Program-made: the position numbers and the translations under genes
Source: Sminthopsis crassicaudata
Taxonomy: Eukaryota
Reading direction: 5' to 3'
Assembly (NCBI RefSeq): GCF_048593235.1
Contig: NC_133622.1
Coordinates: 255,630,055 to 255,694,054, forward strand
Length of the DNA: 64,000 nt
The notes under the pieces: model-generated
Databases searched by the model: none
What the model saw: only the letters and a program-made list of their open reading frames with translations
Told to the model about the DNA's origin: nothing
Shown here: piece after piece, positions 1 to 63,134 of the stretch
Layout: every line of letters starts with the position of its first letter
Position numbering within the stretch: the first letter of the stretch is position 1

Positions 1-405
1 TCTATATCTTTTTCTGTCTCTATATATCTTTGTGTGTCTCTGTGTCTCTATTTCTGTCTCTCTGTGTCTCTGTTCCTGTCTCTGTATCTTTCTGTCTGTT
101 TCTCTGTCTCTGTCTCTGTCTGTTTCTCTGTCTCCATCTCTGTCTCTGTTTCTCTTTCTCAGTCTGTTTCTATCTTTGTGTCACTATTTCTGTTTCTCTC
201 TGTGTGTCTCTGTCTCTGTGTCTCTGTTTCTGTTCTCTGTATCTTTGTGTCTCTTTCTCTCTCTGTATCTATCTCTGTCTCTGTATCTTTGTGTCTGTGT
301 CCCTGTCTCTGTTCCTGTCTCTCTGTCTCTTTGTGTGTCTCTGTTTCTCTCTGTGTGTCTCTGTCTGTTTCTACCCCTGTCTCTCACTGTGTCTCTGTCC
401 CTCTG
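1..405. repeat. Complex (TC/TG)n pyrimidine-rich microsatellite
   Basis: Directly visible; produces spurious low-complexity ORFs. Confidence 0.95.
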
Positions 406-40382: not shown

Positions 40383-43300
40383 CTACTCTTTGTCCAGCAC
40401 TCTGGATGAAGTCCCCGGGAGGCAGAGGCGACACAGGAATCTCGTTTTCCAATCTTCCTCACCGTGCTCCCTCCTCACACACATGTGGTGAACCCAGCCC
40501 CGGCAGGACTCGCACTGCAGCTGCAAGGCGGGACGGGGTCACCGGGCGGCTCGGAAGGGAGCTCAGCCCAGGCACCCCCTGCATGACGCTGCCTCATCCT
40601 TGTGCCTGGAACAGCCCCGGGCTCCCCATCTTCTCTCCTCAGGGCTGGAGCTTCCCCGGCCCATCAGAGGAGAATCCGCGCCTCTGCCCCCTCCCCGCCG
40701 GAATCCGGCTCACCATGGTGAAGACGTCGCTGTTGCCCTCGTCAGTGAGCCGGTTGCAGTAGGAGCACGTGTCCTCCATGGTGACCGTCACCATGGGGCC
40801 CTTGTCCTGTTTCTGGGCGCTGTCCGGGGCCTCTGGGAGGCTGTCAAACGTGGACCAGATGTCGGTGTCCGAGTCCTCGGAGGAAGAGTCCTCCAGGCTG
40901 TCCAGGTATTCTTCATCTTCGTCTTCCTCATCCTAGGTGTGCAAAGGCAGCCACGTAGGGAGCTTCCCGGACTCTAATTTTTGCTCCTGAACTTAAAATA
41001 CCACGAGGGAGCATTTCCCCACCCCCCCGGACGGACCACCACAAAATTCCATTTACACCCCGTGGTTCGGGGGGGTGTTCGTTTGCTGAGGCAGTTGGGG
41101 CTAAGTGACTTGCCCAGAGTCACACAACCAAGCAGTGGGAGCAGATTTGAACTCAGGCCCTGACTTGGGGGCGGGCGCTCTACGCTCTGCGCCACCCAGC
41201 TGCCCGCCCATTGATTTTTAAAAACGAATTCCCCGATTTGCATTTTTGTACACAGCTGCAGCAACATCCGGGGCCTGGGCTGCGGGCGCTGGAATTGTGG
41301 TACCAGCCCCCACTGCAAGGGGCCAAAGGCTCCATACGGGGACTTTTCTGCGTTACATCAGGACAGCCTGCTGGGCCAAAGCCCTGGGCAGCCTCCAGTC
41401 CGGAGGCCAGGATTGCCGCCCTTTTGGGCCCTTCAGTCTCCTCGTCTATGAAGCGCTTCCTCCTACCAAGCCTTTTCCTAGAAGTCGGGGAGCACAGAGA
41501 AAGGGGCGAGAGGACTGTCCCTATGTGATCAAGGGGGCGCAGGGAATCAGCCAGGTGCCGGGGCAAAGGAAGAGCCAGAGGGCCGGAGCCCCATGCCAGC
41601 GGGCTCCGGCCTCTCCCCGAGCCCCTCCACCTGCACAGGAACATGGAAGCCTGGACGGCAGCCCTGGTAGGGCAGGTGAGGGGGGGACGGAAGGGGCTGC
41701 CCCTCCCCCACGCCCGGTCCACTGTCTATCTCCTTCCCTTCTGCAAACAGTGTGGTGGGGTTCCCTCATCGAGGGGTGAGGGGTGGGCCACTCACGTTGT
41801 ACGAGTCCCGATTCTGCAGAAAGAGGATCTTCTGGAGCTGCAGGTCCCAGTCCACCTGGTTCAGGTTCACCACCAGGGAGAGCAGGCTGCAAAAGGAAGG
41901 GGCAGGGGGGGAGCGTGCATCCCCAGGTCACGGGAAGGGGCAGCCGTGGGGAAGGACCGCCCCGGGAGAGCCCAGCACCAACCCCTCCGCCCCCCTGGAT
42001 CGGACTCTGATCCAAAGGCGAAAGACCGAGTCTGGAGTCTGGGCAGCCTGACGTTGAATTGTGGCGCGTACCTCTGCCCGTGTGGGATAAGGGGCAAAGA
42101 GACCCCTGAACTACCTGGCCCCCTCCCCGTGTGAGAGAAACACCCGAGGAGCCTTTGGGCCCAAGCAGGGGAGCTCTCTGAAGGCCGGACTTCCCATCCC
42201 CCAGGGCAAGCCCTGGAGACGGTGGGGCCCCGAACCTCCAGTCTCGCTCGCCCCAGGGGTGGGAGCCTTGGAGAAAATGCCGGGCTGGGCCCCTCCACAC
42301 CCAGACAGCCCCGAGGTTACCAGGGCGGAGCCCGGGGGAAGAGCTGCAGGCCCCAGGCCGAGCCACCCCCAGGAAGCGGAGATCCTCCCCAGCCCCACCT
42401 TACCTGCGCACAAACGAGTTGGTCTTCTCCAGGAGCCCGTGCGCCTGGGGGTGATACACGACGATCAGGTCGCACTTGATTTTTGTTTCTGCTCTCAGGA
42501 TTTGATTGAGCTGCAAGAGCGGGTGGGAGGGGAAGGACAAGGGGCCGCCGGGAGGCAAGGGGACCCTGGGTGCTTATCGGTTCCACACCACAGGAGGGCG
42601 GTCGGGGCGCTCAAGCTCCCTACGTCCCAGAAACCGCCCCCTAAATACCAGGAGCTTCCACTGCCAGGCTGGCGTCTCCCACCCTGGGGCCCGCCAGACC
42701 GACCCGAGCCTCGTCTCCCCCCTCCCCTCCCTCTGACTGCTGAGACCCTTTCTACCCGGTCTCGTGCTGACAAGACCCCGCTGCCCCCATTACCCAGCTG
42801 GCCCTGCCCCCCCCCCCCCACGCCCGGCATCGGGGCCGCCTCCGCACCTGCTGGACAAACCCGCCGCACTGGGTGCTGACGATCCTCTCCGGGAAGCCGA
42901 AGCGGTACACCAGCTTGAGGATCTGCTCGGCCGTCTCCTCGGGGGAGCAGGTCTTCATGGGGGCGACCTCCACCCAGCGCGTGTAGTGGTCCACGACCAC
43001 GAAGATGAAGCGCGCTCCCCTGGCCGTCTGCTTCATGGGCCCCACCAGCTGGAGGCCCACCAAGTGGAAGAGGCCCCGGGCCTGGGGGCGAAGAGTACGG
43101 TCAGGGGAGGAGCTGCAGCTGGCAGCCGGCGGGCACTACCAGCATGTTTGCCAGGCCCAGAGACGGCTCGGAAGGGGACTCTGGTGGAGGTGCTTGGGAG
43201 CTGGGAGCCAGCAAGCCTGGGGTCCAGACTGATGGTCCGCCCTCCTAAGGGCTCGATTTCTTCATCTGAACCCCCAGCTGGTACTGTGGCAAGGCTGAGG

Positions 43301-46300
43301 GCACAGAGCCCGCAGCTCCGAACCCTGGCACCGACCAGCTGTGTGAGTCTAGCGGCCTTGCCACGGGAGTTCCAGGGCCTCGGGGTGCAAGCTCAGGGCC
43401 CTGGACAACCCTCTTCCCCAAGGATGTTGCCGCCAGCCCGGCTTCCCGAGCTTCTCCGTGCCATCCCCTCTCCCCACCCGGGCACAGACAAGAAGGGACC
43501 CCTCCTTCTGATGCCCATCGAGAAACAAATGCACTTCTGCCAAAGGCTGCCCTCCCCTCCTCCCCACAGAGAACTGGGAGCTCACTGAGGCAGGGGCGCC
43601 TCCGTCTGCTCCATGCCCGCTCTGAGCCTGGTGCAGGCCCACAGTCCATGGGGGTGAGTCCTACAAGGCCCCCTTCACCCACTTATCTTCGGGTGTGTTA
43701 AGTAGGACTCTGTCAAAGGGATGAGAACCCAGTCCTGGGGGGGGGCCACTTTGGGGGGGACCCCCTTCTTCACAGCCCCCGGTCCCGTTCTTAGTACACC
43801 TGGCACCCAACAAGGTACCTGGGCCGCAGGGAGCTCCCTTCGGGATTGGGGGGGCTGCTTCTTGGCCTTCAGCAACAAGGGCGGCTCCTTCAGCTCGGTC
43901 GTCGGCCCGTCTTTCTTGGGAGCGCGGGCCAGCTTGACTTTCTTGAAGGACTCGGTTTCCCCAACCTGTGAGGACGAAGCTCAAGGCTGGGGCCCCGCCT
44001 GGCCAGGCGGGCATCTGGCCCAGGGGGAAAGTGCCATTCTTGAGGGGACCCTGAGGCTGCTACTTCCCTGCTTTTAGAGGGGCAGACGCGGGCAGGGAGT
44101 CCCCAGCCGCGGCCCCTGAGCCCACTTACCTTGTTAGCTCGGGTTTCCTTCTCTGCCAACTTGTCCTTCTGGCATTTCTTACACTCCTTGACCTGGAAGG
44201 GGGAGGACCGTCAGGCTTTCAGGCTGGGCCGCCTGACCTTCCCAACCTTCTCCTCCCCCTCCCCCTCCCCCTCCTCTCCCTCCTCTCTAGACCGAGGATT
44301 CTGTTTGCATCTTTGGCTGTTTTATTAAACAATTTACCTTTTGAAAGGCGGCTGGGAAAAGTCTGCCCAGACCCACAACTAACATCCCTAGGACAGGCAA
44401 CAATATTCCCATTTTACAGCTGGAGAAACTGAGGCTCACAGAATCTAGTGCCTTGCCAAGGTGGCGCCGGCAGCAAGTGCGAGTCAGCCCCAGCTCCCAG
44501 TCCGGGCGGCCGTGGCGGGCAGCAGGGTCCCTGAGGGTGCAGCCCACCCAGGGGCGCTGGGCCTCTGCCCAGGCGGAGTCTCTGCGGGGCTGAGCTGCCT
44601 TAAAGGCAGGAGAGGACGTGCTCCCAAAGGATATCAGGAGCCAAGGGTCAGCCGGGGCTGGGCTCGCTCTCCAGAGGCGGGGATTACCCAGAGGGGGGGG
44701 GGGGTCTCCAAGCGGGGTCGGAGGCTCAGAACTTTCAGGATGGAACGTTGGCGCCTCTAACGAGTAAGATCTAGAAACACCCAGGACGAGCCCGAGGAGC
44801 CCGATTCCCACAAATGTCAGAACCGCGGGGGGGGGGGGGGGGGGGCAGGTGATGGCCCGTGAGCTAAGGGGAGCCGGGGCCCCTCGAGGCGCAGGTTTGG
44901 GGGGAGGGCCGGCAGCCTCGCTGCTACATCCATGGCAACCATTGGCCCAGTCCCAACCTTGAGGCCGCGGCTTCTCGGAGCAGCTCCTGTCACAGCAGGG
45001 GGAGGGAGGGCGCTGGTTCTGGGCCTGCGCCCCAGCCCTCGCCCGGCTCTTGGGAACAACCCCAAAATCAGAGGCCTCGGGGGAGGGGAGAGCGCGACCC
45101 TTAGAGGGTAAGGGGGGGCCCAAGACCAAAGAAGTTAGAGAAGTGCCCCCGGCTCCTGAAGGACCCTCAGCCGCTCCTCCCCGCGGGAGCAGCCAGGAGG
45201 GGGACTTTGCAGAGGCCTCAGGCAGTGACTGCCCTCTCCCCCGGCTCCCTGGCGGGGGGCAGAGCCCGGACAGCTGCCTGCCCCCATTAGGGGCAGCTTC
45301 TGCAGCGGGAAGTGGGCTTTGCCCAGGGAACAAGACAAGGGAAGGAAGGAGGCCCCGCCCCCACTTCCCAGTGGCCTCTGGCTCTTAGGTCAATTTAAAT
45401 TTTAAATAGGAACCGTGGGCCCAAAAGAAACAAGGGAGGATGGGGAAGGACCAGGGACAGCTGGGATTCCTTTCCTGGCCTCCACTTACGAGCTCAGCCG
45501 GCCCACTTTGCAGCCCCCTCCCCAGCACCGGCGCAAGGTTTGAATGGACAGGATTTGGGTCAAGAGGCGGTTCCAGGTCTCTGGGCACATACATTTTAAC
45601 CCATTCGGGACCGCCTGCCATGGGGGAGGGGGGGAGTTGGAACAGAAGGCTTCGCGAGGGTCAGTGCTGAAAAGTTACCCAGGCATGTCTTGTGTAGGAA
45701 AGCGGGGCGCAGCTAGTGGGGGGGTGGATGGAGCACCAGGCCTGGGGTCAGGAGGAGCCGAGTTCCGATCCCACCTTATACAGGACTTCCTGCTGCGTGA
45801 CCCCAAGCGCCTCAGCAGAAAGACTTGTTTCCAAGAGGCAGTTCTGGCAGGGGCAGGGACCAGCGAACGTCCTTAAAGGCCCGGCTGAGCCCCTCAGCCC
45901 AGGCCCCCCCCCCCTGCGCAGCCAGTATTTTCAGAGAGTAAAAAGGGTCCAACTACCACGAAGGAGGGAGGGCGGCAGCCTGGGGCCCCTTCTCCGCAGC
46001 TGTTCCAACGCCCCCCAAAACAGGAGCCCGGAGGAAAGCAAATGCAGGAATCTCCGGGGTCACGTTAAGCTACCGGGTCAGAGCCCCAAGTTCAGAAACC
46101 CTGGGGGGGGGCGGGGATAAATGGCTCCACTGGAGCAGCGGGAGCCGGGCTGGGCCACTCTCTGCCCCCACCGGCCGCTGGAAGGTTTTAGGCTGGGGGG
46201 GGTTTATGCCAAGTTGGCCCCGGTTCCGCCCTCCCCGCGGCCTGGGATTTGGGGGGAAGGCCAAGGCAGAGGGCGGCTCCCCAAAGAGGAAACCTGCCTC

Positions 46301-48144
46301 CCAGAGGAGTCCCAGCACTGGGGTCTGAAGCCCCTCTCCCCCCCACCCCCCCCCCCGGCGAGCTCTAGTTACCCATTTCCGGGAGTCGTAAACCACCCCG
46401 GGCCAGTAGTAGGACTTGGTGACATTGCCCCCGGTCTTGCGGATGCCCAGGTGCCCCCGCTCGGAGATGTGGGCCTCCAGGAACGCCTGCCTCTTCTCCT
46501 CCAAAGTAAAAAGGATCTTCTGCTTCTTCCCTCGGCCCTTGTAGTAAAGGTGATTCCCTGGCGAAAGAGCCAAAGCCCAGAGCGGCCGCGTGAGACCCCG
46601 GAGCTCCCCAGCCACCCCCACCCCCGTGACCTTGGCCCTTGACCTCGGCCCCCTCGTTCAGGAAGCATCGGATTGCCAAGGCCACGGGCACTGTCAGGCC
46701 CGGACTTGAGGAGGAGGATCCCCGGGGTCCTGATTACCTAGCAACCCCCCCCCCCAAAGACTGCACGGCAAAAAGCACTTAGCAGCCTGGTCCTGCCTTC
46801 AATGCCCTCCCGCTGAAAGGGGGGGGCGATAGGTGAGGGCAAAATAGGGGGGGGGGTCAGAATAGAGCCAGATTTGCCCCTTTGAGGCTTTTAGATGGTG
46901 GCTCAGGGGCAGCGCTTTCTTCGAGAGGAAGCCCAGCTGTCACCCCTTCCTCCCGGGGGAGCCTGGGACCTACCTCTGGGCCTTTGTGCCAGACATTAGC
47001 CCACAGTTCCGATCCATTTAAAAACCTGGCTGAGTGACCCTGGGCAAGTCACTTAACCCCCGCTGCCCCGGCGCAAAAAGTTAAAAACCAGGGAAGCAGG
47101 TGGAGGCGGCTGGGGAGGGGGGAGGGGGTTCAGAGAGGCAGGAAGGCGGGAGGAGCCCAGCCCCCAGGGGGGAGATGATAAAGTGGTTTAGTGGCCCTTG
47201 ATTGCTGCCTTTTATTATGTCAATGGCCTCCTAATGCGCTCCGCCCCCGCTCAATTTTCCCGCTCAATTTTCCCCCTCAGCCCAGTGAATCAGCCCCGGC
47301 CTCCCTCCCTCTCCCGGGGCCCAGACTTCAGAAGGGCTGAGTCCTGGGGGGGGGGCCTTATTCCCTACCCCAACACACACACAGCGCCCTACAAATCACC
47401 CCCATCTCCTGCTCTCAGAATCGCCCGGACTCCCCCACAGCCAGTCCCAGAGGGGCCCCCATTATTTCCTTTTCCATCTGGACGCCCCCAAAGACCGTCC
47501 ATCAGTCCGGAAGCGGCCCCTCCTGGGGGCTCCGGGCCGTCCCCACCGGCCACCTCCCTTCAGGGGCAGCAGGGCATTTGAGCCCCTTCCCGCCCGCCTC
47601 TCCTCGGACTCCTCCCCCAAGCTTCCCACAGTGCCCCCAGGACACCCACAGGAGCCAGCTCGGCGGGGCACCAGCCTTTGAAAGTCCCAGAAGCTGGGGA
47701 GCAGCCGGGCTGGAGGTGCAAAGAGGGCCGGGAGGCTGGAGGACCCCTGGACTTCCGGCCACAGGTGAGGGCGGGAGGGAGCTCCCTGACCTAGTCTAGG
47801 AGGAATCAGGGACTGGGGGAGGGGCGGGGAGGGAAGGCCATCCAAGGTCAAGTTCTGGGACCAGAGAGAGGGCAAGAGGGAAACACTGACCTTCCTGAAA
47901 GAAATTCGCCTTCTGCAGCAGCTGCCTCCGCAGAGCCTCCGGGGAAGAGCCGGCCTTCAAAAGCTGCAGAGCCGTGGCCTGGCGGGAAAGAAGCAGCGGG
48001 TCGGGGAGTGGGGGGCTGGGGGCCCTGACCTGGCAGCCCCCTGATAGCCGGCTCCCCTGGCGGCCGGGGCCCCCAGACCTGCGGCATGCTCCCCCTCTGC
48101 ACCCTGCACCCGCTCACCTGCCGCTCCCTCCGAAGGGACTCCAT
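40383..48144 (-). CDS. Integrase-PHD gene, copy B: Gypsy/GIN-like HHCC + integrase core (degenerate triad) + acidic region + PHD finger; 10 coding exons, 432 aa
   Basis: Exons (-): 48144-48118 MESLRRERQ; 47978-47891; 46557-46373 (EAH...GHLGIRKT...SYYWPG); 44192-44130 (VKECKKCQ); 43965-43819 (basic linker); 43081-42848 (GLQLVGP...VVVDHYTRWVE...GFPERIVSTQCGGF); 42510-42404 (YHPQAHGLLEKTN); 41886-41796 (DWDLQL); 40932-40714 (acidic, TCSYC); 40520-40383 (LQCESCRGWVHHMC...FLCRLC...*). All introns are GT-AG, phases match, sum 1299 nt, no internal stop. The first exon is the least certain. Confidence 0.85.
41090..41205 (-). mobile_element. Marsupial SINE fragment in the last-but-one intron of copy B
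   Basis: Reverse-complement SINE motifs AAGTGACTTGCCCAG...ATTTGAACTCAGG...CCAGCTGCCC. Confidence 0.7.
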
Positions 48145-48187
48145 CCTCGCAGTCTCAGCTGATGGGCAGCAGCCGCCAGCCCGGGCC

Positions 48188-48196
48188 TTATTTAAA
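48188..48196 (-). promoter_or_regulatory. TATA-like element (TTTAAATAA) upstream of copy B first exon
   Basis: About 45 bp upstream of an ATG in strong Kozak context (gcgaggATGG at 48144), in otherwise GC-rich DNA. Confidence 0.4.
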
Positions 48197-48549
48197 GCAA
48201 GGGGGCTGCCTCTTCACTCCCCCCAGCCCCGCCCCCACCAGTCCTACCCATCCCCCTCACCACCGTCCCCTTCCTGCTCCTGCCGCAGCACGGCCGGCCC
48301 ATCTTGTTGGGACCCAGGAGCCCAAAGGAAGTGTATTCCCCCAGAAGCCTCCTCGACACTGCTGGGGGGGGAGGAGGCTCCCCAAGGTCCTCCCCAGCTG
48401 GCCAGGCCTCTGGACTCTGCTGCCTGAAGGGAGAGCAAGACTTTGGGCAGCTCTGCCCGCTTAAAAATTTACCGGGAAGCCGGGACAAGGCTCTGAAAGG
48501 GAGGCTGGGCGAAGGGAGGCTGGGCTGGGCTCTCATTCCTATTGCTCAG

Positions 48550-48750
48550 TGATAAATGGCTGCACCCAGAGAAAGAACCACAACTCGGCATTTGCCCTCC
48601 TGTTGTTCTCTTGCATTTTGTTTTCCTTCCCAGGTTATTTTTACCTTCTTTCTAAATCTTTTTTTGTGCAACAAGAGAACTGTATAAAAATGTACCCACA
48701 TATTGCATTTAACTTATACCTTAACATGTTTAACCAAAAAAAGAAGAAAT
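48550..48750 (+). mobile_element. Truncated LINE-1 3' UTR fragment just upstream of the copy B promoter
   Basis: AT-rich island TTTTTGTGCAACAAGAGAACTGTATAAA...TATTGCATTTAACTTATAC ending in an A-rich tail, within GC-rich DNA. Confidence 0.55.
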
Positions 48751-50397
48751 AACTGAGGAAAGGAGAAAGGAGGCTGGAGGACTCCCGGCTTTGCTCCGGC
48801 CCCAGCTCCTCCCGGCTTCCCCTGCTCTCCCAGCTCCTCCTCCTCCTCGGGCCTTTGAGCTCCCCAAGCCTTTACTCCCCTGTCCCCTTTCCCCCAAAGC
48901 GCCTCCGTGCTGGCCACAGCCCACCTCCCCTCGGCCGGGCGCACCCTGACCTGGCGGGGCCCCCTTGTCCAGCGCCGAACCAGGCCGCCCCTGGCCGGGC
49001 CCCCTCCCCTCCAGGCTCTCATTTTGAGGCTCGAGGTGCATCAGGGCCACAGGATTTGAGTGTGATGGGACCTGGGCCAGCAACTCCCCATATTCCCGGG
49101 ACAAGTGGGGGCCTAGCCCCTCCCCCCAGGGCAGCCTTCCCAACATCAAGTGGGCCTCTGAGCCCTCCCCTCCAGGAGGACGTGGTCCTCGCACCCCAGG
49201 ACAGCCATCTTGCCTTCTCCAGTCCCTGGGCCCTTCCTCCCAGGCTGACCCGTCCATTCCACCTCCTCCAGCCCCTCTTGTCATCCTCTCTCTGACCTCT
49301 GGACACTTTCTGCGCCTACAAACAGGCTTGTGCTCTCCCGCCCTCAAAGAGCCCCCATCCCCGCGCGTCCTGTCCCCTCCTTCCCCTTTTTGCCTTGCGA
49401 AAGACTGGGCGGATTTGTAGCCGGCTGGCCTGGGAGACAGCACTCCTCTGGCCCCGGGGTACATGGGGGGGTCTTGTGGGCCCCCCTCAGGGTCACCTCA
49501 GCAGAGGAGCGGACTCAGCTGCCCCCCCCTTCCCCATTACTGGGTTCCTATTGCAGTGAAGGAATGAGGACTTTGTTTTCTCTGCCAAAAAAAAAAAAAA
49601 ATGTTCTTTGATGTAGAAATTAGACTAATTGGGGGTCGCCTCCCCAAGACAATGGGGAGAGAATCCAGAGCCCTCCCTTGGCCTCCCTGAGCGGCCTCAG
49701 GTCAGTGACTTACCTGCCCAGGTGTAGGCAGCCTCCAGCATGAGCTGTCGGGTCTGCAAAGCGCCCCACTGAACTGGCGCTGCTGGGGCCCCTTGGACGG
49801 ATGAGGGAGTGGCGGCAGGTTAGGGGATTTTCTCAGGGTCCCGGAGCCTCGGAATTCAGGCCTTCCTGCCGCGAGCTTCCGCCCCCTCCTGGAGGAGCCC
49901 CTGCTGCTTAGAGGAGGGTCCCTTGCAGCCCAAACCTCAGCCCCTCTGGGAGGGATCCGCAAACTGGCCAAGAGTCAATGCTCGAGGTTTTGTGGGCGCA
50001 GAGACAACAGCAAGGCTCCGGCAAACCTCCATGGGATTCTTGTAGAGGAAATTAAAAGTGTATAACAAGAACTGAGGCCGCAGGGCTTTTTGGGGGTTTT
50101 TTTGATGTGGATTATTGAGAAGGAAAATTGGGATTCTTTTTGAGAGGAAAACTTTCCGCTTAATTGGGATCCAAAGAGCCAAACCAGGGGCCGGTGTTCC
50201 TGCCGGCGCAGGGACGGAACAAAGGAGCGCGGTGACAGTGATGGAGAATTTCCTGGGGAAAAGCAGCAGGAATCCTTCATCTCAAAGTTAAAGCTCAGGC
50301 AGATTTAATCAAGATTTAGACAAATGGGGAAAGCGCACTTCGAACCGAGCAGCCTAGGTTTACACCATTAGCGCCCGAGGCTGGGAAAGCGGCCGAC

Positions 50398-50483
50398 TCC
50401 TCCTCCTCCTCCTCCTCCTCCTCCTCCTCCTCCTCCTCCTCCTCCTCCTCCTCCTCCTCCTCCTCCTCCTCCTCCTCCTCCTC
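50398..50483. repeat. (CCT)n trinucleotide microsatellite, about 28 units
   Basis: Directly visible, between the two integrase-PHD genes. Confidence 0.95.
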
Positions 50484-51395
50484 CGCTCCCCTTTCCCAGG
50501 GGAAACTCCCCTCGGCGCTCCCCGTTTCCCTTCTAATTGCTCCCCAGAGGCAGGCCCAAGGACAGCCTCCGCACCACCGTCCGGACCGGTTTTCAGAACC
50601 TCTGCTCCTCCTGGGACGGGATGCAGCCCTCGGCAATGTCCTGGCAATCCCGGCTGTAGGAAGGATGCAGGGGAAACCCCAAGGGCAGCGGGGACCCCGA
50701 TACTGTTCAAGAAATCCCTAGGCTCCCCGGCAGTCACCTTAGGATTGGGGCTGCTGAGGGGCCCTGCTTCAGGGGGGCTGGGAGCCTCGTCCTTGGGGGG
50801 GGCCTCTCCCACCTGGGCTCAGACAAGTGCTCGGTATCAGGAGGGGGGGTCCTCAGCCCCATTGCCAAACTCCCCCCCCTCCCGGTGTGGAGTTCTTTTG
50901 TTCTGCCCCTCCCCCCAAGTGGATGTGCCTGCTCTTTGCTCTTTCCTCCCTGGGGATTTAGCCCTCTTTAATGGAAGGTCCGATTAGGAATCACAACTTC
51001 TCTCCACTTAGAGATTGTGGAGACACCAGTCCAGAACCCGTTTGGGGGATCCCCCGTACCCCAACCCTCTGGCTACTACAAACAGACATGTCTGGCCTCT
51101 CAAGCTCCCCTCAATCTGGCTCCGGACGCCTTTCAGACCTGGCCCGCGTCAGGCCGTTCTCACCGATCCCCCCAGTCAGCAAAGCGCCCCCTCTGGTCCC
51201 ATCCCAGGCCGCTCGCCCTCCCTTAAGGCCCCAGCCCCGCCTTGGGCTCCCCCCTCCCCCAATCTCATGGTTACTTGTTTTTAGGGCTCATTCCCAGCCC
51301 TGTCCCAGAGAATCAAGGACCCTCTCACTTTCATCTTTACACCAAAAGTACAGCCGGTGCCAAATAAGTGCTGAACGGTGCCAAATAAGTGCTGG

Positions 51396-51401
51396 TTTAT
51401 T
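51396..51401 (-). terminator. Probable polyadenylation signal of integrase-PHD copy A
   Basis: First AATAAA on - after the stop at 52195 (about 800 nt), followed by a tandemly duplicated CACTTATTTGGCACCG element. Confidence 0.5.
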
Positions 51402-52194
51402 GATAGCAGGACTTTCTGAGACAGCAAGAGGCAGAACACAGCTCCGCGGCCGCAGGGCACAGCGCGGGTCCGCGCCAGGGGACGGAGCCGCCCGGCCGGA
51501 GGGGAGCAGGACGAGCCCAGGCTTCACTCAAGGCCAAGGGGCCGGTTTGGGGCGGCTGAGCTCGGAATAACCGCGGGAGCCGGCGGGAGCGGCCCGTGCC
51601 TGAAAAGGGACGTCAAGGTCACCAAGAGACCCGGAGATTGGGGAGGGGCAGGGCCCAAGTGGCGCCGGGCCCCCTGGGCTCCTCTCAACCCCCCCCTTTC
51701 AGAGCCGCTTCTGAGGCAGGCTCAGCTTCAGGCCCCGCCCTCTCTCTGTGGAGGGGGGGAGTGGGGGGGGTTGTGTTGTTGTGGGGGGGGGGCGGCACAC
51801 ACTGTCCCGGCCATCCCGGTTCTCTGCCTCTGTCAGCCTAAGGCTTGCATGTCCCCTAGTTGTCTGGTGATGACTTAGCAGGTCATGGGGGGAGGGGGAG
51901 GCTGTGCGGGAGCAGCGCGGGTCGGGGTTCCGGGGGCCGCAGGGAGGCCCTCTGCCAGACCTTTCCTGTCTCTGGGGGATGATCGCTGGAGGAAAGGCAG
52001 AGCCGGAGGAGGAAGGCCCCTGAGCCCCCCCCCCCAGCCAGAGGGCAGCCCAGGGTGATAGTCTGGGACCAGCCAGCAGAGGGAGCCGGGCCTGGGGAGG
52101 GGGAACACGAGCAGAAAGCCCCCCCACGTTGGCCCCCCCAGCTGCTCGGGGCCCCGGGCCCAGCCCCCGGACTCACCCCCGCGGTGCCGCTGCG

Positions 52195-55100
52195 TCACTC
52201 TGGGGCTGGGGGCCCGGGGAAGCAGGCCTTGCACCGGAACGCGCTCCTCCAGCCGTCGCCCCGGTACCAGCGCTGCACACAGGTGCGATGGGCCCAGGCC
52301 TGGCACGCGCCGCACTGCAGCTGGGAAGGCGGACCGCCGTTACCCGGCAAGCTCCGCGGGAACCACCACGGACCGATCGCCCGCTCCCACCCCCCCACAA
52401 AACCACTAAGCGCCCCCTGAGCTGCTCTCCCCTTCCCCCCTCCTTGCCCCTCCCGGAGGGTCCGGCCCCAGGGTGCCATGGAGCAGGTCAGACGCCCCTG
52501 GGGAAGGCTCCCCAGCGGAGCAAGGAGCACGCTGGGAGGGAGGGCAAAGGGGGTCCCGGGCTGCAGGCCCACTCACCATGGTGAAAACTTCACTGTCGCC
52601 CCTGTCGGCCAGCTGGTCGCAGTAGGGACACGTGTCCTCCACGCCCAGGGCGGCCACCAGCACCGTCTCCGAGTCCTCGTCTGGGGCCGGCTCCGAGGAG
52701 GCCGAGGGGAAGGGAGCGGAGGGCAGAGCGTCCTCCCCGTCCAAGTCCTCCTCCTTCTCCTCGGAGCCCAGGTCTTCCTCCTCAGACTCATTCTCTGCCT
52801 GGGGGGCGAGAGCCCAAGCCCGGCCTCAGCACTGTCTGCCCCCACCCCCAGGGGCTTCCCGCCCACCCCTCTGCTGGTCTCTGCGCCAGCCCCTTACTGA
52901 GGAGGCCCCAACCCCCCTCCCCCACCCGGCCTGCCCCTTTCTCCATCCCCTGGGGCAGCCATCATCTCCAGGGCCGGCCTCACTTTTACTTCCCCAGATT
53001 TGAGGGCAGGGGGCGTTTGCTGACCGGTTCTGCCCTCCGCTCCCCATGTGGGTGAGGGCGGGGGCGCCCAGCCCGAGGAGCCCCGGGCACTGCCAGGGAG
53101 CCCCGGGGAAGGGGACCGAGAGCTCAGTGCGAACATTCACGTTCAAAGCCGGCCGTGGGCACTTAGGACTCTGTAGTTTCTTTTGGGAGAATAGCTGGAA
53201 ACCGGTTTTTATTGAGGTGTTGGTACAAAAGCCTTAGAACCCAGGGGAACAAGAAGCGGGAAAAGAAAAGCCGGTTTTGGGGACCGCGTCCGAGGGGCCG
53301 CGTCGGGGTGACTGGGGAGAAAAAGCGCCCGCGCAGTTTTCTTAGCCAAGGGGCTGGCGTCTGGCAGTCACAGGCCCCCCTCCCTTGCCCAGGACTCCCG
53401 GGGCCGACATCCCGGCGTTCCCTGGGGCCAGGCGCAGGCGGACCGTCCTCACTCCAAGGCTCCCTCTCCGTTTGACAGCTGAGGCGCGGGGGCAAGCGGA
53501 TCTGCCCAGGGTCTCCCGACTAAGGGGCCAGCGGCCGGGGCTCCGGACTCCCCTCCTCCCCACGCCTGGGGCTGCGGGACCGACACCTCTCTGGCTCGGA
53601 GAGCCCCGGCCGGGAGCCTCCACCCAGCCGCCCCCGTCGCAGGTCACCGGCTTCTGGACGGAACCGCCGGCTGGACATCACTGAGCAAACTCGGGCAAAC
53701 TGACCTGCGGCTCGGCACCTGGACGGGCCCGGCCAAGGGAAGGCCCAGGTGCCCCAGGAGCTCCTTTGGAGGCCGGTGGCCGGCTCTTTTCTCTCCTGGG
53801 AACCTTCCCCGCACCACACCCCAACACGCCCCCCTCGGGAAGCATGTGGAGCTCAGCAGGGCAGAGCCCCCCCCCCCCGCCTCAGGCTCCTCTCTCACCT
53901 AGCCCGCGGCCCGACTGTGAGCACCCAGAGACCTCCCCCCCAAGCCAGAGGCGGGCAGATGGAGGCCAAAGGGAGCACACAGATGGCAGAGTGGCCGATG
54001 GGGGGGGCACGCAGGGGAGCAGGAGGAGCCCTCACCTGCATCTGCAGGAAGAGAACGTTCGGCAGCTCGAGGTCCCAGTTGGCGGTGTCTCCCCTCACCA
54101 CCAGCGTGAGCAGCCTGAAAACCAAAGAAGTTTGTTGGGACTCCACAGAAACAGGGGGACGGCCCCCGATGGCGGCCCCCCTCACCTCTGCACGAAGGCG
54201 TTGGTCATCTCCAGGAGCCCGTGCGTCCGGGGCTGGTAGCTGGCTACAAGGTCACACTGGAGATCGGCCCGGATCCTCAGAATCTGATTCAGCTGCGAGA
54301 GACGGGGGGGATGGGAGGCTGACAGTAAGGGGGACATGGGAGGCTGGCAGCGAGGAGATCATGGAGCAAGCACAGCCTCTGTGCCTCATCCTCGGGGCCG
54401 CCTCCAATCAGAACCCAGCTCTGGACTATCCGGGCATGGATAAATGGAGCCCAGGGTTGGCGTCTCCCCCTTTACTCCCCAGCAAAGGGGATTCTGCTGT
54501 GCATTCTTTGGGCTCCCCACTGATCTAGAGCCCAGAGAGTCCTCGCCCGGTTCCCCCAAGCTGAGTCCGTGCTTCTGTGCACTTCCACCTGGAGCGCCCC
54601 CTCCCGCACTCCCGAGGCCGGCCTGAGCAGCCGGGCCCCCCTTTTGGCCCCCACATCTGGCCCCTGAGAGCCCAGACCCCAGGCCGAGCACCTGCCGGAC
54701 GAAGTCGCCGCTCTGGGTGCAGACGATCCTCTCCGGGAAGCCGAAGCGGTACACCAGCTTGAGCACCTGCTCGGCCGTCTCCTCGGGGGAGCAGGTCTTC
54801 ATGGGGGCGACCTCCACCCAGCGCGTGTAGTGGTCCACGACCACGAAGATGAAGCAGGCTCCCCGGGGCGTCTGCTCCATGGGCCCCACCAGCTGGAGGC
54901 CCACCAAGTGGAAGAGGCCCCGGGCCTGGGGGCGAAGGGCGCGGTCAGGAGAAGAGCTGCAGCCCAGCCGGGCTCATCTGAAGCTCTGGTGCTCAGAATG
55001 CTGGTTCGGACAAGGCCGATACCCAGAGAGCCCGTGGCTCAGCATCCGGCCTTGTCGCTGGGCACAGCCTGCCCGCCATCCTGGCAGTGCCCACCCCCAG

Positions 55101-57662
55101 GGCCCCGCCTTTCCTTTACCCAGATGCCCGTGCTGACGGTAATCCACAAGGATTTGCAGGCTGATGGGCACAAAGGGAAACCCTCACCTCGACCCGGGGA
55201 GGGCCCAAGTGAAGAACCAGAACTCACCCTCCTCATCCCCTCCCCTCCCAGAATCCCCTCCGGGGCCCAGCTGCCACTGGCCCAGTCCAGTCCAGTCCTT
55301 CCGGGTGGACGTCTGATGGGGCACCGAATGCCCCCTCGCTGGAGAAGGGGGTAAACAGCGTACCTGGGCCGCCAGGGCTTCTTTCTTGGGGACCACCGCA
55401 GCTGGGGGCAGGAGTCGCAGGGGCGGCGAGACGGACGGCCTCCCCCTGAGCCGAGCCGCCAGGGGCACTGCCTGCTTATACTTCTTAGCTTTGACCTGGG
55501 ACCCAGTGGGAGGTGTCTGTGGGAGACTCCAAGAAAGACCGTCTCTCCCCCCAGCCCCTCAGACCTCCCCCCCAAGCTCTGACCACAGGCCCCCCCGCCC
55601 TTACCCTGGCACTCCGGGCTTCCTGCTTTGCTAACTTGTCTCTCTGGCACTTCTTACACTCCTTCACCTGGGGATGGGAGAGCCCGAGCTGAAGCAGGGG
55701 GGGCCAGGAGGAAAGCCCCCAGCTCCTGACCTCCCCTCCCCCCCCAGCCGTCACTCGTATCCTGGACCCTTCTTATGGGCCCCTTCCCACGTCCCCACCA
55801 ATCTTAAACAAAACCAGCCGACCTCCCCGGGGGGAGATGCCACGGCCAAAGGAGGGATGGGGGGGGGAGTCTGCGGCCCCACCCATTAGTGGTCATGGGA
55901 CACAGGACAAGAGCTAGTGAGCCCTAAAGTACCTAGGGGCCCAACCCCCCCACATCCCCAATGGGAAAGCACCAAAGCCCAATGAACAAGCACCTATTAA
56001 GTGCTTGCTGTATGCCCCGTGGCGGGAACAACAGACCAAAAAACCCCACAGCCAATCAAAGATCAATTAGCCCTCAAGGGCAAAGGCCAGGCTGGTGGTC
56101 AAGGCTGCATCCATGATTGACAGGAGGTGGCTTGGGGGGGGAGGTGGGGATGCTGTAGTTGGCCCCTTGAGGGACAGCAAAGTTGTCCCCCGGGATGGAA
56201 GGAGGCAGGGCAGGGTTCAGAAGGGACCCTGGGGGAACCTGGGCTTCCCAAAGGTGGAGCTGCCCAGCTCGGCGCTGCCAGGGAGGGGCCGGGGCAGTGA
56301 GGTGACCGTGTGTGTCAGAGCAGGGCATGGAGGACAGAGTGGGTAGGGAGCCTAGAAAGGGAGGCTGGGAGCAGGCCGGCCCCGTGGAAGGGTTGGGATC
56401 GCCCGCAGCTCCTCGGAGCCTCCATGCATCCCTCCCTGCCCCGGGCGCCCCCTGCGGCACCGTCCCTTTCCCGCAGCTCCCCCTGCTCTCTCTGGCTCAG
56501 TCTCTCGGTTTCCCCATCAGTAAGTGGGGACCCCACCGCCACCACTTCCGGGGCGTCCCTCACCCACTGCCGGGCGTGCAGCGTGATCCTGGGCCAGTAG
56601 TAGGACTTGGTGATGTTGATGCCCGTGGCCCGGATGCCGTGGTGCCGCTCCTCCGAGACCACGTGAGCCTCCTCAAAGGCTTTCCGCTTCTTCTCCGGGG
56701 TGAAGAGGACTCTCTGGAACTTGCCTTTGCCCTGGTAGTACAGCACGCCGCCTGGGAGCAAGCGGGCCCAAGAACTGCTCGGGGCCCCGCCCCCTCCCTC
56801 CCTGGGGCTCAGCGGAAGCCTTTGGGTGAGGCCCCTCCAGCACCAGAAAGTGCTGATCCAGGCCCACCTCTCCCTCCCAATATGGAGCCCTCCCTGCCTC
56901 CAGCTCCAGCTGCCGCCCTCCAGCCGTTTTCAGTCCTGTTCCATCTCTGTGGCAAAGACATTGCCACAATTCCCTTCTCCGCCCATTTTACAGACGAGGA
57001 AACTGAGGCAAACGGGGTTAAGCGCCCAGGGTCCCATAGTTAGGAAGGGTCTGAGACGGATATGAACCAGGAAGAGGAGTCGTCCTGACTCCTGCCATTC
57101 AACCAAGAAGGCCCCCAGTCTTTGGGGTTTTACTTCCCCAGTCCTCCTGCCTAAAGGATGGCTTCCACACAGGTGGGCAGAACGGCCTTCCTCTCCCATC
57201 CTTCCTGCCCTTTAAGGCTCCTTCCCACAAGCACCCCCTCTCCCCAAAAGCTACCCCGCCTTCCCCAGCCAGGCCACGCCCCCCCAACCCCTAGGAGGTG
57301 ACTGAAGGCGCCAGACAGGAGGACACCCGGGCCCCCTCCCCCAGCCCAGCCCCGGGAAACCAAGACCCGGCACGCCCCAGGTTTGGGGACAGGGATGGGA
57401 GCTGGAGCCCTGAGGCCCCCGAGGAGCTCGAGACCCGAGGCAGGGAGGCCCATGAGCCCCGGGCAGCTAGTCACACAGTGCTCAAGATCCCGGGCCCAGG
57501 GGCTTGGCTGAAGTCTAGCACAGCTCCCCGGGGCCAGGGGCTGCAGGGCGGCTAGGCACCCGGCCGGAAGTGACACTGACCTTCCAGGACAAAATTGGAG
57601 TTCCGGCTGAGCTTTCTTTTGACCGAAGGGGTCGGGGACGAGGTCATCCTCAAAAGCTCCAT
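52195..57662 (-). CDS. Integrase-PHD gene, copy A: same architecture as copy B; 9 coding exons, 410 aa
   Basis: Exons (-): 57671-57581 (ATG at 57662); 56751-56564 (EAH...RHHGIRAT...SYYWPR); 55667-55605 (VKECKKCQ); 55495-55364; 54925-54692 (core); 54292-54186 (YQPRTHGLLEMTN); 54114-54036 (NWDLELPNVLF); 52798-52577 (acidic, TCPYC); 52320-52195 (LQCGACQAWAHRTC...FRCKAC...*). All introns are GT-AG, phases match, coding sum 1233 nt. An additional upstream exon is possible. Confidence 0.87.
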
Positions 57663-58299
57663 AGTGCCGACCTGTCCGAGAAAACAGCTAAGCCATTCTG
57701 GCCGGAGCAGGGAGGAGAACCCGCCAAGGCGGAGAACTGCTGCCCAGACAGAAGCCCCCCCCCCCCCTCTCCCAGGGCAGAGGTTTGCCAGCCTGGCAGG
57801 GGCCGGCATGCGCTGGGATGGAGGAAGTCAGAGTAGAAGCTCCCCCTCCAGGAGCGAATCCCTCCACTTCCCTGGGGACAATTCCAGGCTAGGGGAAGTT
57901 TATGGGGAGCAGGATTCGAATTCAAAAGCAAATCCTCCCCCGGCAGGGAAAAGCTCAGAGGACCGAGCGCCGGAGCTAAAATCCCATCAGCACGGCGGGG
58001 ATCCCCTGGGGCCGGGTCAGAAAGCAGGAGGAGGCCCGCAGCCTTCTCGGGCGGGCTGGGGGGGCATTCAGGGGATTACCGCCAGGGATCCGCAGCCCCC
58101 TCCCTCCCGGCCCAACTCACACCCCGAGGGCAGCGGCCTCCCAAGTTGCGCCTCTAGGAGCAGCTTCAATCTCCGGCCTCGGTTCCTCTCAGCCTAAGGA
58201 CTCTGGAGGCTTTAGCCGCTCTCCCCACCCCCACCCTCCCCAAGGAGAGCCTCACTTTAAAGCTGGAACTCGGGCAGGGGCGGGTAACTTCCCAGAGGT

Positions 58300-62699: not shown

Positions 62700-63134
62700 T
62701 TCAATTGTACCTTCAATAATTCTTTCCCTAACTTACAACCTCATTATACAATTTGGACTTATTTTCACTAACCAATTAATTTCAACACATGTTTTTCTGT
62801 GTTTTTTATTTACCTAAACAATGGATTTAAACTTCAATGCTGTCACTGAATTTCACCTGCCTTCAGTTGCTTTCTGATTTCAAAATAAGTTTTCTTTTTC
62901 TGGGAGCACCTTCAATCAATGTCCCAATCACGATATATTTGGTGCTTTCAGGTTGGTTGTTTAAAAACAGTAAACATAGGAGATAAAATGAATTCCAAAT
63001 CTACCCACTTTTATCCTTTTCTTATTCCTTATTCTGCCTTCTAGTAATAAATATTCTGCAGTGGGCCAGAACTCTGGACAAATGTACTTGAAACAAGGTG
63101 TTTAACTCAGTGGAATTGATGAGATGATGGTTCT

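What the first reader, a model, noticed from the sequence alone, without database searches (positions are those of the whole stretch)
40383..57662. Tandem pair of domesticated, intron-containing integrase-PHD finger genes
Two paralogues on - each splice into an uninterrupted ORF (432 aa and 410 aa) with the same architecture. First comes a Gypsy-type N-terminal module (F.L..G.LYY...EAH...H.GI..T...YYW...W|V..C..CQ, i.e. HHCC zinc binding). Then a Lys/Arg-rich linker exon, an rve-like core (L.GP...VVVDHYTRWVE...GFPERI...F...Y.P..HGLLE.TN...WD..L..(V/I)LF), an Asp/Glu-rich stretch and a C-terminal C4HC3 PHD finger. There are no gag, RT, LTR or TIR remnants, and the spliceosomal intron positions and phases are conserved between copies despite only about 58% identity in the HH exon. 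These therefore look like host genes under selection rather than elements. I know of domesticated GIN1/GIN2/NYNRIN-type genes, but none with a PHD replacing the GPY/F C-terminal module, and none at this locus in eutherians. This is the best candidate for an undescribed system: a transposon-derived chromatin-reader pair.
Basis: partly seen in the sequence, partly recalled or inferred. Interest (0 to 1): 0.95.

Follow-up and report, generated by a model that had tools for sequence, protein, structure and literature searches.

The report
Marsupial integrase-PHD finger gene cluster
Two neighbouring marsupial genes, part of a conserved three-gene cluster, are former transposon integrases that lost their cutting residues, gained a PHD zinc finger and are kept by selection; the function is unknown and I found no paper describing them.

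Summary
Two minus-strand genes splice, through GT-AG introns only, into open reading frames of 432 aa (A, 48144-40383) and 417 or 410 aa (B, 57662-52195). Their eight shared introns have identical phases.

Both encode an H2C2 integrase zinc domain, a Lys/Arg linker, an integrase core, an acidic stretch and a C4HC3 PHD finger. Two of the three catalytic residues are replaced (D to Q, D to T), so they cannot be active DDE enzymes.

They are host genes, not elements:
- No RT, gag, LTR or TIR is present.
- Orthologues lie in the same arrangement in devil, bilby and wallaby. A third paralogue (C) sits head-to-head with B in devil and bilby.
- dN/dS is 0.12 for A and 0.2-0.4 for B and C. The three folded domains of A score 0.05 or less.

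Exon lengths, intron phases and a tree place them with intron-bearing vertebrate GIN-like integrase genes. Their closest relative is a fourth marsupial paralogue (D), which keeps the GPY/F motif. In A, B and C that motif is cut off and replaced by the acidic and PHD exons.

One core exon is homogenised between A and B by gene conversion.

Databases list these genes only as uncharacterised, and I found no paper on them. A chromatin-reading role is inferred, not shown.

The parts
48118..48144 (-). Gene A exon 1: start codon, MESLRRERQ
   Evidence: The same N-terminus is found in the wombat and wallaby orthologues.
47891..47978 (-). Gene A exon 2: N-terminal helix region, ends ..FFQE|G in phase 1
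   Evidence: The same phase-1 intron is present in B, C, D and the turtle and fish GIN-like genes.
46373..46557 (-). Gene A exon 3 (185 nt): LYY motif and the His-His half of the H2C2 zinc domain
   Evidence: Pfam Integrase_H2C2, 30.7 bits against a cut-off of 25.5. Exon length and phase are shared with the fish gene.
44130..44192 (-). Gene A exon 4: Cys-Cys half of H2C2 (VKECKKCQ)
   Evidence: C104 and C107 are invariant in the family.
43819..43965 (-). Gene A exon 5: Lys/Arg-rich linker, a likely nuclear localisation signal
   Evidence: dN/dS is 0.32. The signal role is inferred.
42848..43081 (-). Gene A exon 6 (234 nt): first part of the integrase core. Catalytic D1 is replaced by Q (GLQLVGP) and D2 by T (STQ).
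   Evidence: Profile alignment to PFV and Ty3 integrases. Pfam rve scores 22.3 bits, below its cut-off.
42404..42510 (-). Gene A exon 7 (107 nt): core part 2, with the catalytic Glu position retained (LLEKTN)
   Evidence: The 107-nt exon ending in phase 2 is shared with B, C and the fish gene.
41796..41886 (-). Gene A exon 8 (91 nt): end of the core (WD..L..ILFLQ). It stops before the point where relatives carry GPY/F.
   Evidence: the corresponding exon is 169 nt and carries GPY/F in D and in the fish gene.
40714..40932 (-). Gene A exon 9: acidic stretch and the first Cys pair of the PHD finger (CSYC)
40383..40520 (-). Gene A exon 10: remainder of the PHD finger (C-x2-C, W-x-H, C ... C-x2-C) and the stop codon
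   Evidence: Pfam Znf_SCAND3 29.1 bits (cut-off 27) and PHD 22 bits (cut-off 24). All eight zinc ligands are invariant.
57581..57662 (-). Gene B exon 1: start codon (MELLRM..). An in-frame ATG at 57809 could extend it.
   Evidence: The devil orthologues start at the same Met.
56564..56751 (-). Gene B exon 2 (188 nt): His-His half of H2C2
   Evidence: Pfam Integrase_H2C2, 27.6 bits.
55605..55667 (-). Gene B exon 3: Cys-Cys half of H2C2
55364..55516 (-). Gene B exon 4: basic and Pro-rich linker. The alternative acceptor at 55495 gives the 410-aa form.
   Evidence: Both forms exist as devil isoforms (406 and 413 aa).
54692..54925 (-). Gene B exon 5 (234 nt): core part 1, with Q and T at the two Asp positions
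   Evidence: It is 94.4% identical in DNA to gene A exon 6.
54186..54292 (-). Gene B exon 6 (107 nt): core part 2, Glu retained (LLEMTN)
54036..54114 (-). Gene B exon 7 (79 nt): end of the core, no GPY/F
52577..52798 (-). Gene B exon 8: acidic stretch and the first Cys pair of the PHD finger
52195..52320 (-). Gene B exon 9: remainder of the PHD finger and the stop codon
   Evidence: Pfam PHD 18.9 bits, below its cut-off. The ligands are invariant.
42844..43129 (-). Gene-conversion tract in A. Its partner in B is 54688-54971. It covers the first core exon plus about 45 nt of the upstream intron.
   Evidence: 92.7% identity over 286 nt, against 70-86% in the other exon-centred blocks. dS is 0.076 here against 1.03 elsewhere. 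A and B share lineage-specific substitutions.
59264..59350 (+). Probable first coding exon of paralogue C, head-to-head with B. It continues into a 51-nt tandem-repeat ORF that runs to 60151. The rest of C is not in the window.
   Evidence: The N-terminus of a devil C isoform matches here at 72%. The B/C head-to-head order is seen in devil and bilby. Repeats.

Best explanation
A and B are two members of a marsupial gene cluster (A, B and C). The cluster descends from an intron-containing, Ginger1/GIN-type integrase gene.

Proposed history. An ancestral GIN-like gene gained an extra intron in its linker and duplicated. One copy, D, now lies at a different locus from A-C (in wallaby, between a RabGAP-TBC gene and a CASTOR1 gene) and kept the C-terminal GPY/F module. 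The other copy came to use a donor site about 78 nt earlier in the last core exon. That removed GPY/F and joined the core to two new exons encoding an acidic stretch and a PHD finger. This copy then duplicated locally into A, B and C. The triplication predates the split of dasyuromorphs, bandicoots/bilbies and diprotodonts.

Proposed function. Both catalytic aspartates are gone, so the proteins cannot perform DDE strand transfer. Selection maintains the three folded modules: the H2C2 domain, the dead core and the PHD finger. The most likely role is that of a nuclear, non-enzymatic adaptor. The H2C2 domain and the core would provide multimerisation and nucleic-acid binding, as they do in integrases. 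The basic linker would provide nuclear import. The acidic stretch and the PHD finger would dock the protein on histone tails.

What is shown: gene structure, descent, loss of catalytic residues, purifying selection, conserved gene order and gene conversion. What is inferred: nuclear localisation, multimerisation, histone binding and any downstream function.
For: - Gene models are intact and canonical.
- Domains: Integrase_H2C2 is above the Pfam cut-off. A family profile hits PFV integrase and Ty3 integrase at E about 1e-10, with Q and T aligned to the two catalytic Asp residues; Q is invariant in all 7 family proteins.
- PHD: all eight C4HC3 ligands are invariant in 10 sequences. Nearly all sequence matches in the PDB and 48 of the top 50 fold matches are PHD fingers.
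- Selection: A, window against wallaby, gives omega 0.118 (95% bootstrap 0.08-0.16; dS 0.90). By domain: H2C2 0.03, core 0.05, PHD 0.01. B gives 0.20-0.42 and C gives 0.30.
- Gene order: B then A in wallaby, and B head-to-head with C in devil and bilby.
- Descent: exons of 185/188, 234 and 107 nt with identical phases are shared with D and with fish and turtle GIN-like genes. The extra linker intron is shared only with D. The last core exon is 169 nt with GPY/F in D and the fish gene, but 79-94 nt in A, B and C.
- Tree: (A,(B,C)) 100/100; with D 99/88; with vertebrate GIN-like genes 99/90; separate from RT-bearing elements.
Against: - No expression or splice-junction data were available.
- Pfam rve and PHD both score below their curated cut-offs.
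- The structure models are of low confidence: pLDDT 50.6 for the full length and 60.7 for the PHD. Fold matches to PHD fingers have E of 0.026 or worse.
- Only two of the usual four H3K4me3 cage positions (Met and Trp) look conserved, judged from the PHF2 alignment and my recollection of the PHF2 cage. The ligand therefore cannot be predicted.
- Curated GIN1, GIN2 and Ginger1 sequences could not be fetched, so 'GIN-like' rests on unnamed vertebrate relatives.
- A-C and D both sit on long branches, so their sister relationship could be inflated. The shared linker intron argues that it is real.
- dS is close to saturation, and is saturated in the PHD.
Confidence: 0.6

Rival explanations
1. The proteins are defence factors against retroelements. 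A dead integrase that still binds element DNA ends, intasome partners or the chromatin sites used for integration could block retrovirus or LTR-element integration. The local expansion to three copies would then reflect an arms race.
For: - The integrase N-terminal domain and core are retained but are catalytically dead, as expected for a dominant-negative.
- The family has duplicated locally, and B and C evolve faster than A (omega 0.2-0.4 against 0.12).
- As general background, other element-derived genes are known to restrict retroviruses.
Against: - No sign of positive selection was seen. A is under strong constraint and the core exon is kept nearly identical between A and B.
- The nearest relatives are DNA-transposon-type GIN genes rather than retroviral integrases.
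- There are no functional data.
Confidence: 0.15
2. They are copies of a mobile or recently mobile Ginger1-type DNA transposon, or remnants of a Gypsy element, rather than host genes.
For: - Ginger1 transposase genes contain introns, and at least one family carries a PHD finger.
- Two unnamed database proteins that lack an RT domain combine this integrase type with a PHD.
Against: - There are no TIRs, LTRs, RT or gag.
- Both catalytic Asp residues are lost in every member.
- The same positions and orientations are found in four marsupials from three orders.
- dN/dS is far below 1.
- Only three or four loci per species appear in protein databases.
Confidence: 0.03
3. They are real, conserved genes, but the PHD finger does not read histones. 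It could instead be a structural or protein-interaction zinc module, and the proteins could act outside chromatin, as reported for the crustacean integrase-derived gene Imagin, whose protein is cytosolic in oocytes.
For: - The PHD scores below the Pfam cut-off, and the two Tyr cage positions of the PHF2-type pocket are not conserved.
- Imagin shows that a dead Ginger1-derived integrase can be cytosolic.
Against: - The best sequence and fold matches are histone-binding PHD fingers, including PHF2, KDM7, MLL, BPTF and Spp1.
- The conserved W-x-H core, the adjacent acidic stretch and the basic linker fit a nuclear chromatin protein. This last point is inference.
Confidence: 0.2

Closest known systems
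GIN1 and GIN2 (Gypsy integrase genes, derived from Ginger1/GIN DNA transposons; Bao 2010 PMC2836005, Chalopin 2012 PMC3424704)
   Same: Single-locus, multi-exon host genes that encode an H2C2 zinc domain and an integrase core. Unnamed vertebrate GIN-like genes share five intron positions and phases with A and B and form their sister group in the tree.
   Different: GIN proteins keep the GPY/F module and have no PHD. According to the literature, GIN1 keeps the catalytic residues. GIN2 lies between OGFOD2 and ABCB9, whereas this locus lies next to a ZNF511-like gene. A and B lost both Asp residues and carry an acidic stretch and a PHD instead of GPY/F. Curated GIN1 and GIN2 sequences were not compared directly.
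Marsupial paralogue D (uncharacterised; wallaby, sugar glider, dunnart, devil, antechinus, opossum)
   Same: It is the closest relative (99/88 in the tree). It shares all the core introns and an extra linker intron. Its catalytic Asp residues are also lost.
   Different: It lies at another locus (in wallaby, between a RabGAP-TBC gene and a CASTOR1 gene). It keeps a GPY/F-like motif and a long low-complexity tail, and it has no PHD.
Imagin (malacostracan crustaceans; PMC12863088)
   Same: A multi-exon gene derived from Ginger1 that retains H2C2 and the core, has lost the DDE triad, has no inverted repeats and is under purifying selection.
   Different: It is an independent domestication in arthropods. 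It is single-copy, has no PHD and its protein is reported to be cytosolic.
KRBA2 and SCAND3/ZBED9 (Ginger2-derived; PMC3575427)
   Same: Mammalian host genes that fuse a transposon integrase to a chromatin or transcription module. The Pfam model Znf_SCAND3 gives a marginal hit on the last exon of A.
   Different: They derive from another transposon superfamily (Ginger2). Their added modules, KRAB or SCAN, are N-terminal. The paper read here calls them eutherian-restricted, although a 2013 survey also lists both in marsupials.
Ginger1 transposases that carry a PHD (Ginger1-9_HM with Ulp1 and PHD, Bao 2010; two unnamed database proteins that lack an RT domain)
   Same: A Gypsy-type integrase and a PHD finger occur in one protein.
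   Different: Ginger1-9_HM is a mobile element with TIRs. The PHD position differs, and a protease or kinase domain accompanies it in Ginger1-9_HM and in one of the two database proteins. Pairwise similarity to the marsupial PHD is not significant (E 0.054).

Membership tests
GIN-type domesticated integrase genes (GIN1/GIN2 lineage) | N-terminal H2C2 (HHCC) integrase zinc domain | tested here: met
   Pfam PF17921 scores 27.6-50.5 bits against a cut-off of 25.5. H68, H74, C104 and C107 are invariant.
GIN-type domesticated integrase genes (GIN1/GIN2 lineage) | Integrase (RNase H-fold) core | tested here: met
   The family profile hits PFV and Ty3 integrases at E 6e-11 and 7.5e-11 over the core. 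Pfam rve reaches only 18-22 bits against a cut-off of 32.6. The predicted secondary structure follows the beta-beta-beta-alpha-beta-alpha-beta-alpha order of that fold (my reading).
GIN-type domesticated integrase genes (GIN1/GIN2 lineage) | C-terminal GPY/F module | tested here: not met
   The last core exon ends 75-90 nt earlier than in D and the fish gene, before the GPY/F motif. Acidic and PHD exons follow instead.
GIN-type domesticated integrase genes (GIN1/GIN2 lineage) | Introns at the conserved GIN/Ginger1 positions and phases | tested here: inconclusive
   Five positions and phases are shared with unnamed fish and turtle GIN-like genes and with D. The three published conserved introns are shown only in a figure, and curated GIN1 and GIN2 genes were not available for comparison.
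GIN-type domesticated integrase genes (GIN1/GIN2 lineage) | Groups with GIN/Ginger1 integrases rather than with Gypsy elements in a tree | tested here: inconclusive
   A-C and D group with intron-bearing vertebrate GIN-like genes at 99/90, apart from RT-bearing polyproteins. No curated GIN1, GIN2 or Ginger1 reference was in the tree.
GIN2 orthologue | Location between OGFOD2 and ABCB9 (Chalopin 2012) | tested here: not met
   The neighbour in the window is a C2H2 gene that I recognise from memory as ZNF511-like. In bilby a TNFR-domain gene lies beyond C.
Active Ginger1 DNA transposon | Terminal inverted repeats and target-site duplication | tested here: not met
   No inverted repeats frame either copy.
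Active Ginger1 DNA transposon | Intact DDE triad | tested here: not met
   The triad reads Q, T, E in A and B. In C the Glu position is also lost, to K or R.
Active Ginger1 DNA transposon | Many dispersed copies per genome | not testable with these tools
   No marsupial genome search was available. Protein databases show only three or four loci per species.
Gypsy/Ty3 LTR retrotransposon remnant | LTRs and gag, protease, RT or RNase H remnants | tested here: not met
   tblastn with 14 polyproteins hits only the integrase exons. There are no long direct repeats.
PHD finger | C4HC3 ligands with PHD spacing | tested here: met
   The pattern is C-x2-C-x16-C-x2-C-x4-H-x2-C-x15-C-x2-C in A. All eight ligands and the Trp two residues before the His are invariant in 10 sequences.
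PHD finger | Match to the curated Pfam PHD model | tested here: inconclusive
   PF00628 scores 16-22 bits against a cut-off of 24 in the orthologues where it is reported; it is absent from the reported matches (E up to 0.1) for the wombat B and bilby C proteins. PF23663 scores 29.1 bits against 27 on the last exon of A only.
PHD finger | PHD fold | tested here: inconclusive
   The AF2 model has pLDDT 60.7. 48 of the top 50 Foldseek matches are PHD or ADD fingers, but E is 0.026 or worse and TM is about 0.5.
PHD finger, H3K4me3-reading subclass | Aromatic cage | tested here: inconclusive
   The Met and Trp positions align with PHF2. The two Tyr positions are not aromatic. The cage positions themselves are recalled from memory.

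The most novel reading that the evidence does not exclude
A marsupial-specific family of catalytically dead integrases (A, B and C) forms homo- or hetero-oligomers through the retained integrase domains and is tethered to particular chromatin states by a newly acquired PHD finger. That would be a lineage-restricted chromatin regulator or integration-blocking system with no eutherian counterpart. Gene conversion would keep the shared core exon of A and B matched so that they can still pair.
Probability: 0.25. Interest if true: 0.8.

Novelty: new variant of a known kind. Interest (0 to 1): 0.6.

Why it matters
Domesticated integrase genes are few in mammals. A 2013 survey counted ten retroelement-derived domesticated genes in marsupials, five of them integrase-type genes (GIN1, GIN2, SCAND3, KRBA2, NYNRIN), and listed none with a PHD finger.

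This finding adds a conserved three-gene cluster and a fourth, apparently undescribed paralogue. It shows at the level of exons how a transposase C-terminal module was exchanged for a histone-reader-type finger. It also gives a clear case of exon-limited gene conversion between old paralogues.

If the proteins do bind chromatin, they would be a marsupial-restricted regulatory or genome-defence module. That could be tested in opossum or in devil cell lines.

Tried and rejected
- GIN2 identity: rejected on location and on the absence of GPY/F.
- Gypsy or ERV remnant, or active transposon: rejected.
- Full-length AF2 model: too poor to use for a fold search (pLDDT 50.6).
- PHD inherited from the two unnamed PHD-bearing integrase proteins that lack an RT domain: their similarity to the marsupial PHD is not significant, so the source of the PHD and acidic exons stays open.
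- Identifying the fish, frog and turtle relatives as GIN1 or GIN2 through their neighbours failed or was ambiguous. Look-ups found nothing for two proteins. The fish gene sits among C2H2 genes near a TMEM132 gene. The frog gene model is fused to a flavoprotein gene.
- The species of one more distant homologue (255 aa, MetaClust only) could not be found. Presence of A-C in American marsupials is therefore unproven, although D has an opossum orthologue.
- CpG-island criteria gave nothing convincing at the start sites. Poly(A) signal hexamers (AATAAA or ATTAAA) lie downstream of both stop codons, but this is weak evidence.
- Six literature searches found no description of the family.

Full report
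**Observation.** The region holds two paralogous genes on the minus strand. A self-comparison shows six conserved blocks between 39.5-48.5 kb and 51-59 kb, with no similarity detected in the sequence between the blocks. An 88-residue core exon, searched against 1.84 billion representative proteins, found full-length marsupial homologues. I used these as guides to rebuild the splice junctions.

- Gene A has 10 coding exons (48144-40383) and encodes 432 aa.
- Gene B has 9 coding exons (57662-52195) and encodes 417 aa, or 410 aa with an alternative acceptor at 55495.
- All introns are GT-AG and there are no internal stops.
- The eight shared introns have phases 1,0,0,0,0,2,0,0 in both genes.

The two proteins are 57.5% identical.

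**Domains.** Pfam finds Integrase_H2C2 above its cut-off in every member. It finds rve and PHD only below their cut-offs.

A profile of seven family proteins hits PFV integrase and Ty3 integrase at E about 1e-10. In those alignments:
- The first catalytic Asp aligns with Gln (GLQLVGP), which is invariant in the family.
- The second catalytic Asp aligns with Thr (STQ).
- The Glu is kept in A and B but lost in paralogue C.

The proteins therefore cannot be DDE enzymes.

The C-terminus has the pattern C-x2-C-x16-C-x2-C-x4-H-x2-C-x15-C-x2-C. All eight ligands and a Trp are invariant in ten sequences. Nearly all PDB sequence matches to this region are PHD fingers, at marginal E values; they include PHF2, EBS, KDM7, PHF20, Spp1 and BPTF. 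An AF2 model of the finger is of modest confidence (pLDDT 60.7). Even so, 48 of its top 50 Foldseek matches are PHD or ADD fingers, with E of 0.026 or worse. The full-length model was too poor to use.

**Not an element.**
- tblastn with 14 RT-bearing Gypsy polyproteins hits only the H2C2 and core exons anywhere in the 64 kb.
- The repeat search finds only the paired exons, SINE fragments and homopolymer runs. Nothing resembling LTRs or TIRs frames the genes.

**Distribution and gene order.** All close homologues are marsupial: wombat, tammar wallaby, Tasmanian devil, antechinus and bilby. Three more homologous sequences carry no species name. Sources name them only 'uncharacterized protein', 'Integrase catalytic domain-containing protein' or, automatically, 'Gypsy retrotransposon integrase-like protein 1'.

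They fall into three orthology groups, A, B and C. Fetched loci show the following:
- In wallaby, B is followed by A on the same strand.
- In devil and in bilby, B lies head-to-head with C.

In the window, the N-terminus of a devil C isoform matches 59264-59350 on the plus strand. The rest of C is not in the window. The cluster therefore predates the divergence of Dasyuromorphia, Peramelemorphia and Diprotodontia.

The window species itself is a dasyuromorph close to the devil but distinct from it. Identity is 98% in the integrase region, and dS is 0.26 for the 5' half of B.

**Selection** (Nei-Gojobori, my script, codons aligned by tblastn).
- A, window against wallaby: dN/dS 0.118 over 416 of 432 codons (bootstrap 0.08-0.16; dS 0.90).
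- A by domain: H2C2 0.03, core 0.05, PHD 0.01 (dS saturated), acidic stretch 0.16, linker 0.32.
- B: 0.20 against bilby, 0.26 against devil, and 0.42 for the 3' part against wallaby.
- C, devil against bilby: 0.30.

The dead core and the PHD finger are thus as constrained as the zinc domain.

**Origin.** The nearest proteins outside the family are of two kinds.
1. A fourth marsupial gene, D. It is present in wallaby, sugar glider, dunnart, devil, antechinus and opossum. In wallaby it lies between a RabGAP-TBC gene and a CASTOR1 gene. It has a GPY/F-like motif and no PHD.
2. Intron-bearing fish, frog and turtle genes with an intact DDE and GPY/F.

Exact exon maps show that A, B, C, D and the fish and turtle genes share:
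- the phase-1 intron before the LYY motif;
- the phase-0 intron between the His pair and the Cys pair (exon of 185 or 188 nt);
- the phase-0 intron before the core;
- the 234-nt core exon;
- an exon ending in phase 2 (107 nt in A, B, C and the fish gene).

An additional linker intron is shared only by A-C and D. The following exon is 169 nt and encodes GPY/F in D and in the fish gene. In A-C it is 79-94 nt, ends just before that motif, and is followed by the acidic and PHD exons.

A maximum-likelihood tree of 61 integrase regions gives:
- (A,(B,C)) with support 100/100;
- D with 100/100;
- A-C plus D with 99/88;
- that clade plus the vertebrate GIN-like genes with 99/90;
- RT-bearing elements elsewhere.

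Published work derives GIN1 and GIN2 from intron-containing Ginger1 transposons. It places GIN2, which has GPY/F and eight coding exons, between OGFOD2 and ABCB9 in marsupials as well. This locus instead lies next to a C2H2 gene that I recognise from memory as ZNF511-like.

I could not obtain curated GIN1, GIN2 or Ginger1 sequences. Placement within the GIN lineage is therefore well supported, but the exact position is not settled.

The source of the PHD exons is also unknown. Ginger1 elements that carry a PHD exist, but their PHD shows no significant similarity to this one.

**Gene conversion.** The 234-nt core exon is 94.4% identical between A and B, against 54-78% for the other exons. The tract of 286 nt extends into the upstream intron. 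Synonymous divergence is 0.076 in this exon against 1.03 elsewhere. In both the dasyurid and the wombat lineages, A and B share lineage-specific residues in this exon: wombat A and wombat B are 92% identical, whereas wombat A and devil A are 83% identical.

**Mechanism.**
- Shown: descent from an integrase gene, loss of catalysis, and selection on all three folded modules.
- Inferred: a nuclear, non-enzymatic adaptor. The integrase domains would supply oligomerisation and nucleic-acid binding, the basic linker nuclear import, and the acidic stretch with the PHD finger histone docking.

The PHD ligand cannot be predicted, because only the Met and Trp cage positions align with PHF2.

The rivals are a retroelement-restriction role, a non-chromatin role like that of crustacean Imagin, and a mobile element. 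The last is effectively excluded.

**Novelty.** A 2013 survey lists ten retroelement-derived domesticated genes in marsupials, and none is an integrase-PHD gene. Six full-text searches found no description of this family. I rate it a new variant of a known kind: a GIN-type domesticated integrase with a new C-terminal module, expanded into a conserved marsupial cluster.

**Not tested.** Expression, absence from eutherians and monotremes, and any biochemical activity.

Noticed in passing
window 59264-60151 (+): An ORF of 295 aa made largely of a tandem repeat with a 51-nt period. TRF gives 12.8 copies at 59468-60084; the repeat tool gives 13 copies over 59324-60103. The repeat unit encodes roughly PERPGPRGAQxGRFLQE. 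The first 29 residues of the ORF match the N-terminus of a devil isoform of paralogue C. The repeat may be an expanded first exon of C, but the remaining exons of C are not in the window.
   Followed up: partly
locus L001 10001-18537 (wallaby): A fourth integrase-derived gene, D (597 aa, 8 coding exons). It has H2C2, a dead core, a GPY/F-like motif and a long Gln/Pro/Thr-rich repeat tail. It lies between a RabGAP-TBC gene and a CASTOR1 gene, is conserved from opossum to wallaby, and is annotated only as uncharacterised (once mis-named as a kinase). It is not at the published GIN2 position.
   Followed up: partly
locus L005 1794-5917 (-) and 10001-14564 (+) (turtle Mauremys mutica): Two intron-bearing GIN-like integrase genes lie head-to-head. 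This recalls the B/C arrangement in marsupials. I did not examine whether it is an orthologous arrangement, a coincidence or a pair of elements.
   Followed up: no
window 36535-37182 (-): A single long exon encoding a C2H2 protein (Pfam zf-C2H2 and DUF7565). I recognise it from memory as ZNF511-like. It lies about 3 kb beyond the 3' end of gene A and is useful as a synteny anchor.
   Followed up: partly
window 50397-50484: A perfect (CTC)n run of 29 units between genes B and A. It reads as poly-Glu or poly-Arg in two minus-strand ORFs.
   Followed up: no
window 7-399, 2091-3237, 5009-6292, 9149-9907, 12954-13954, 33207-33561, 63130-64000: A dense set of minisatellites with periods of 20/6, 25, 43, 33/11, 4/76, 117 and 48/281 nt. 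Some create long spurious ORFs. Together with 58-70% G+C over much of the window, this suggests a subtelomere-like region. The N run (12681-12938) directly adjoins the AT-rich (AGAT)n array, which begins at 12954, and was left untouched.
   Followed up: no
window 38216-38246, 44819-44849, 57755-57787, 60353-60387: Several runs of 13-19 G or C. Two lie inside introns or flanks of genes A and B. They are reported as weak inverted repeats only because of their composition.
   Followed up: no
window 57663-57809 (-): The reading frame of B stays open upstream of the chosen ATG, back to another ATG at 57809. This would add 49 residues. Devil models start at the downstream ATG, so the true start is uncertain.
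   Followed up: partly
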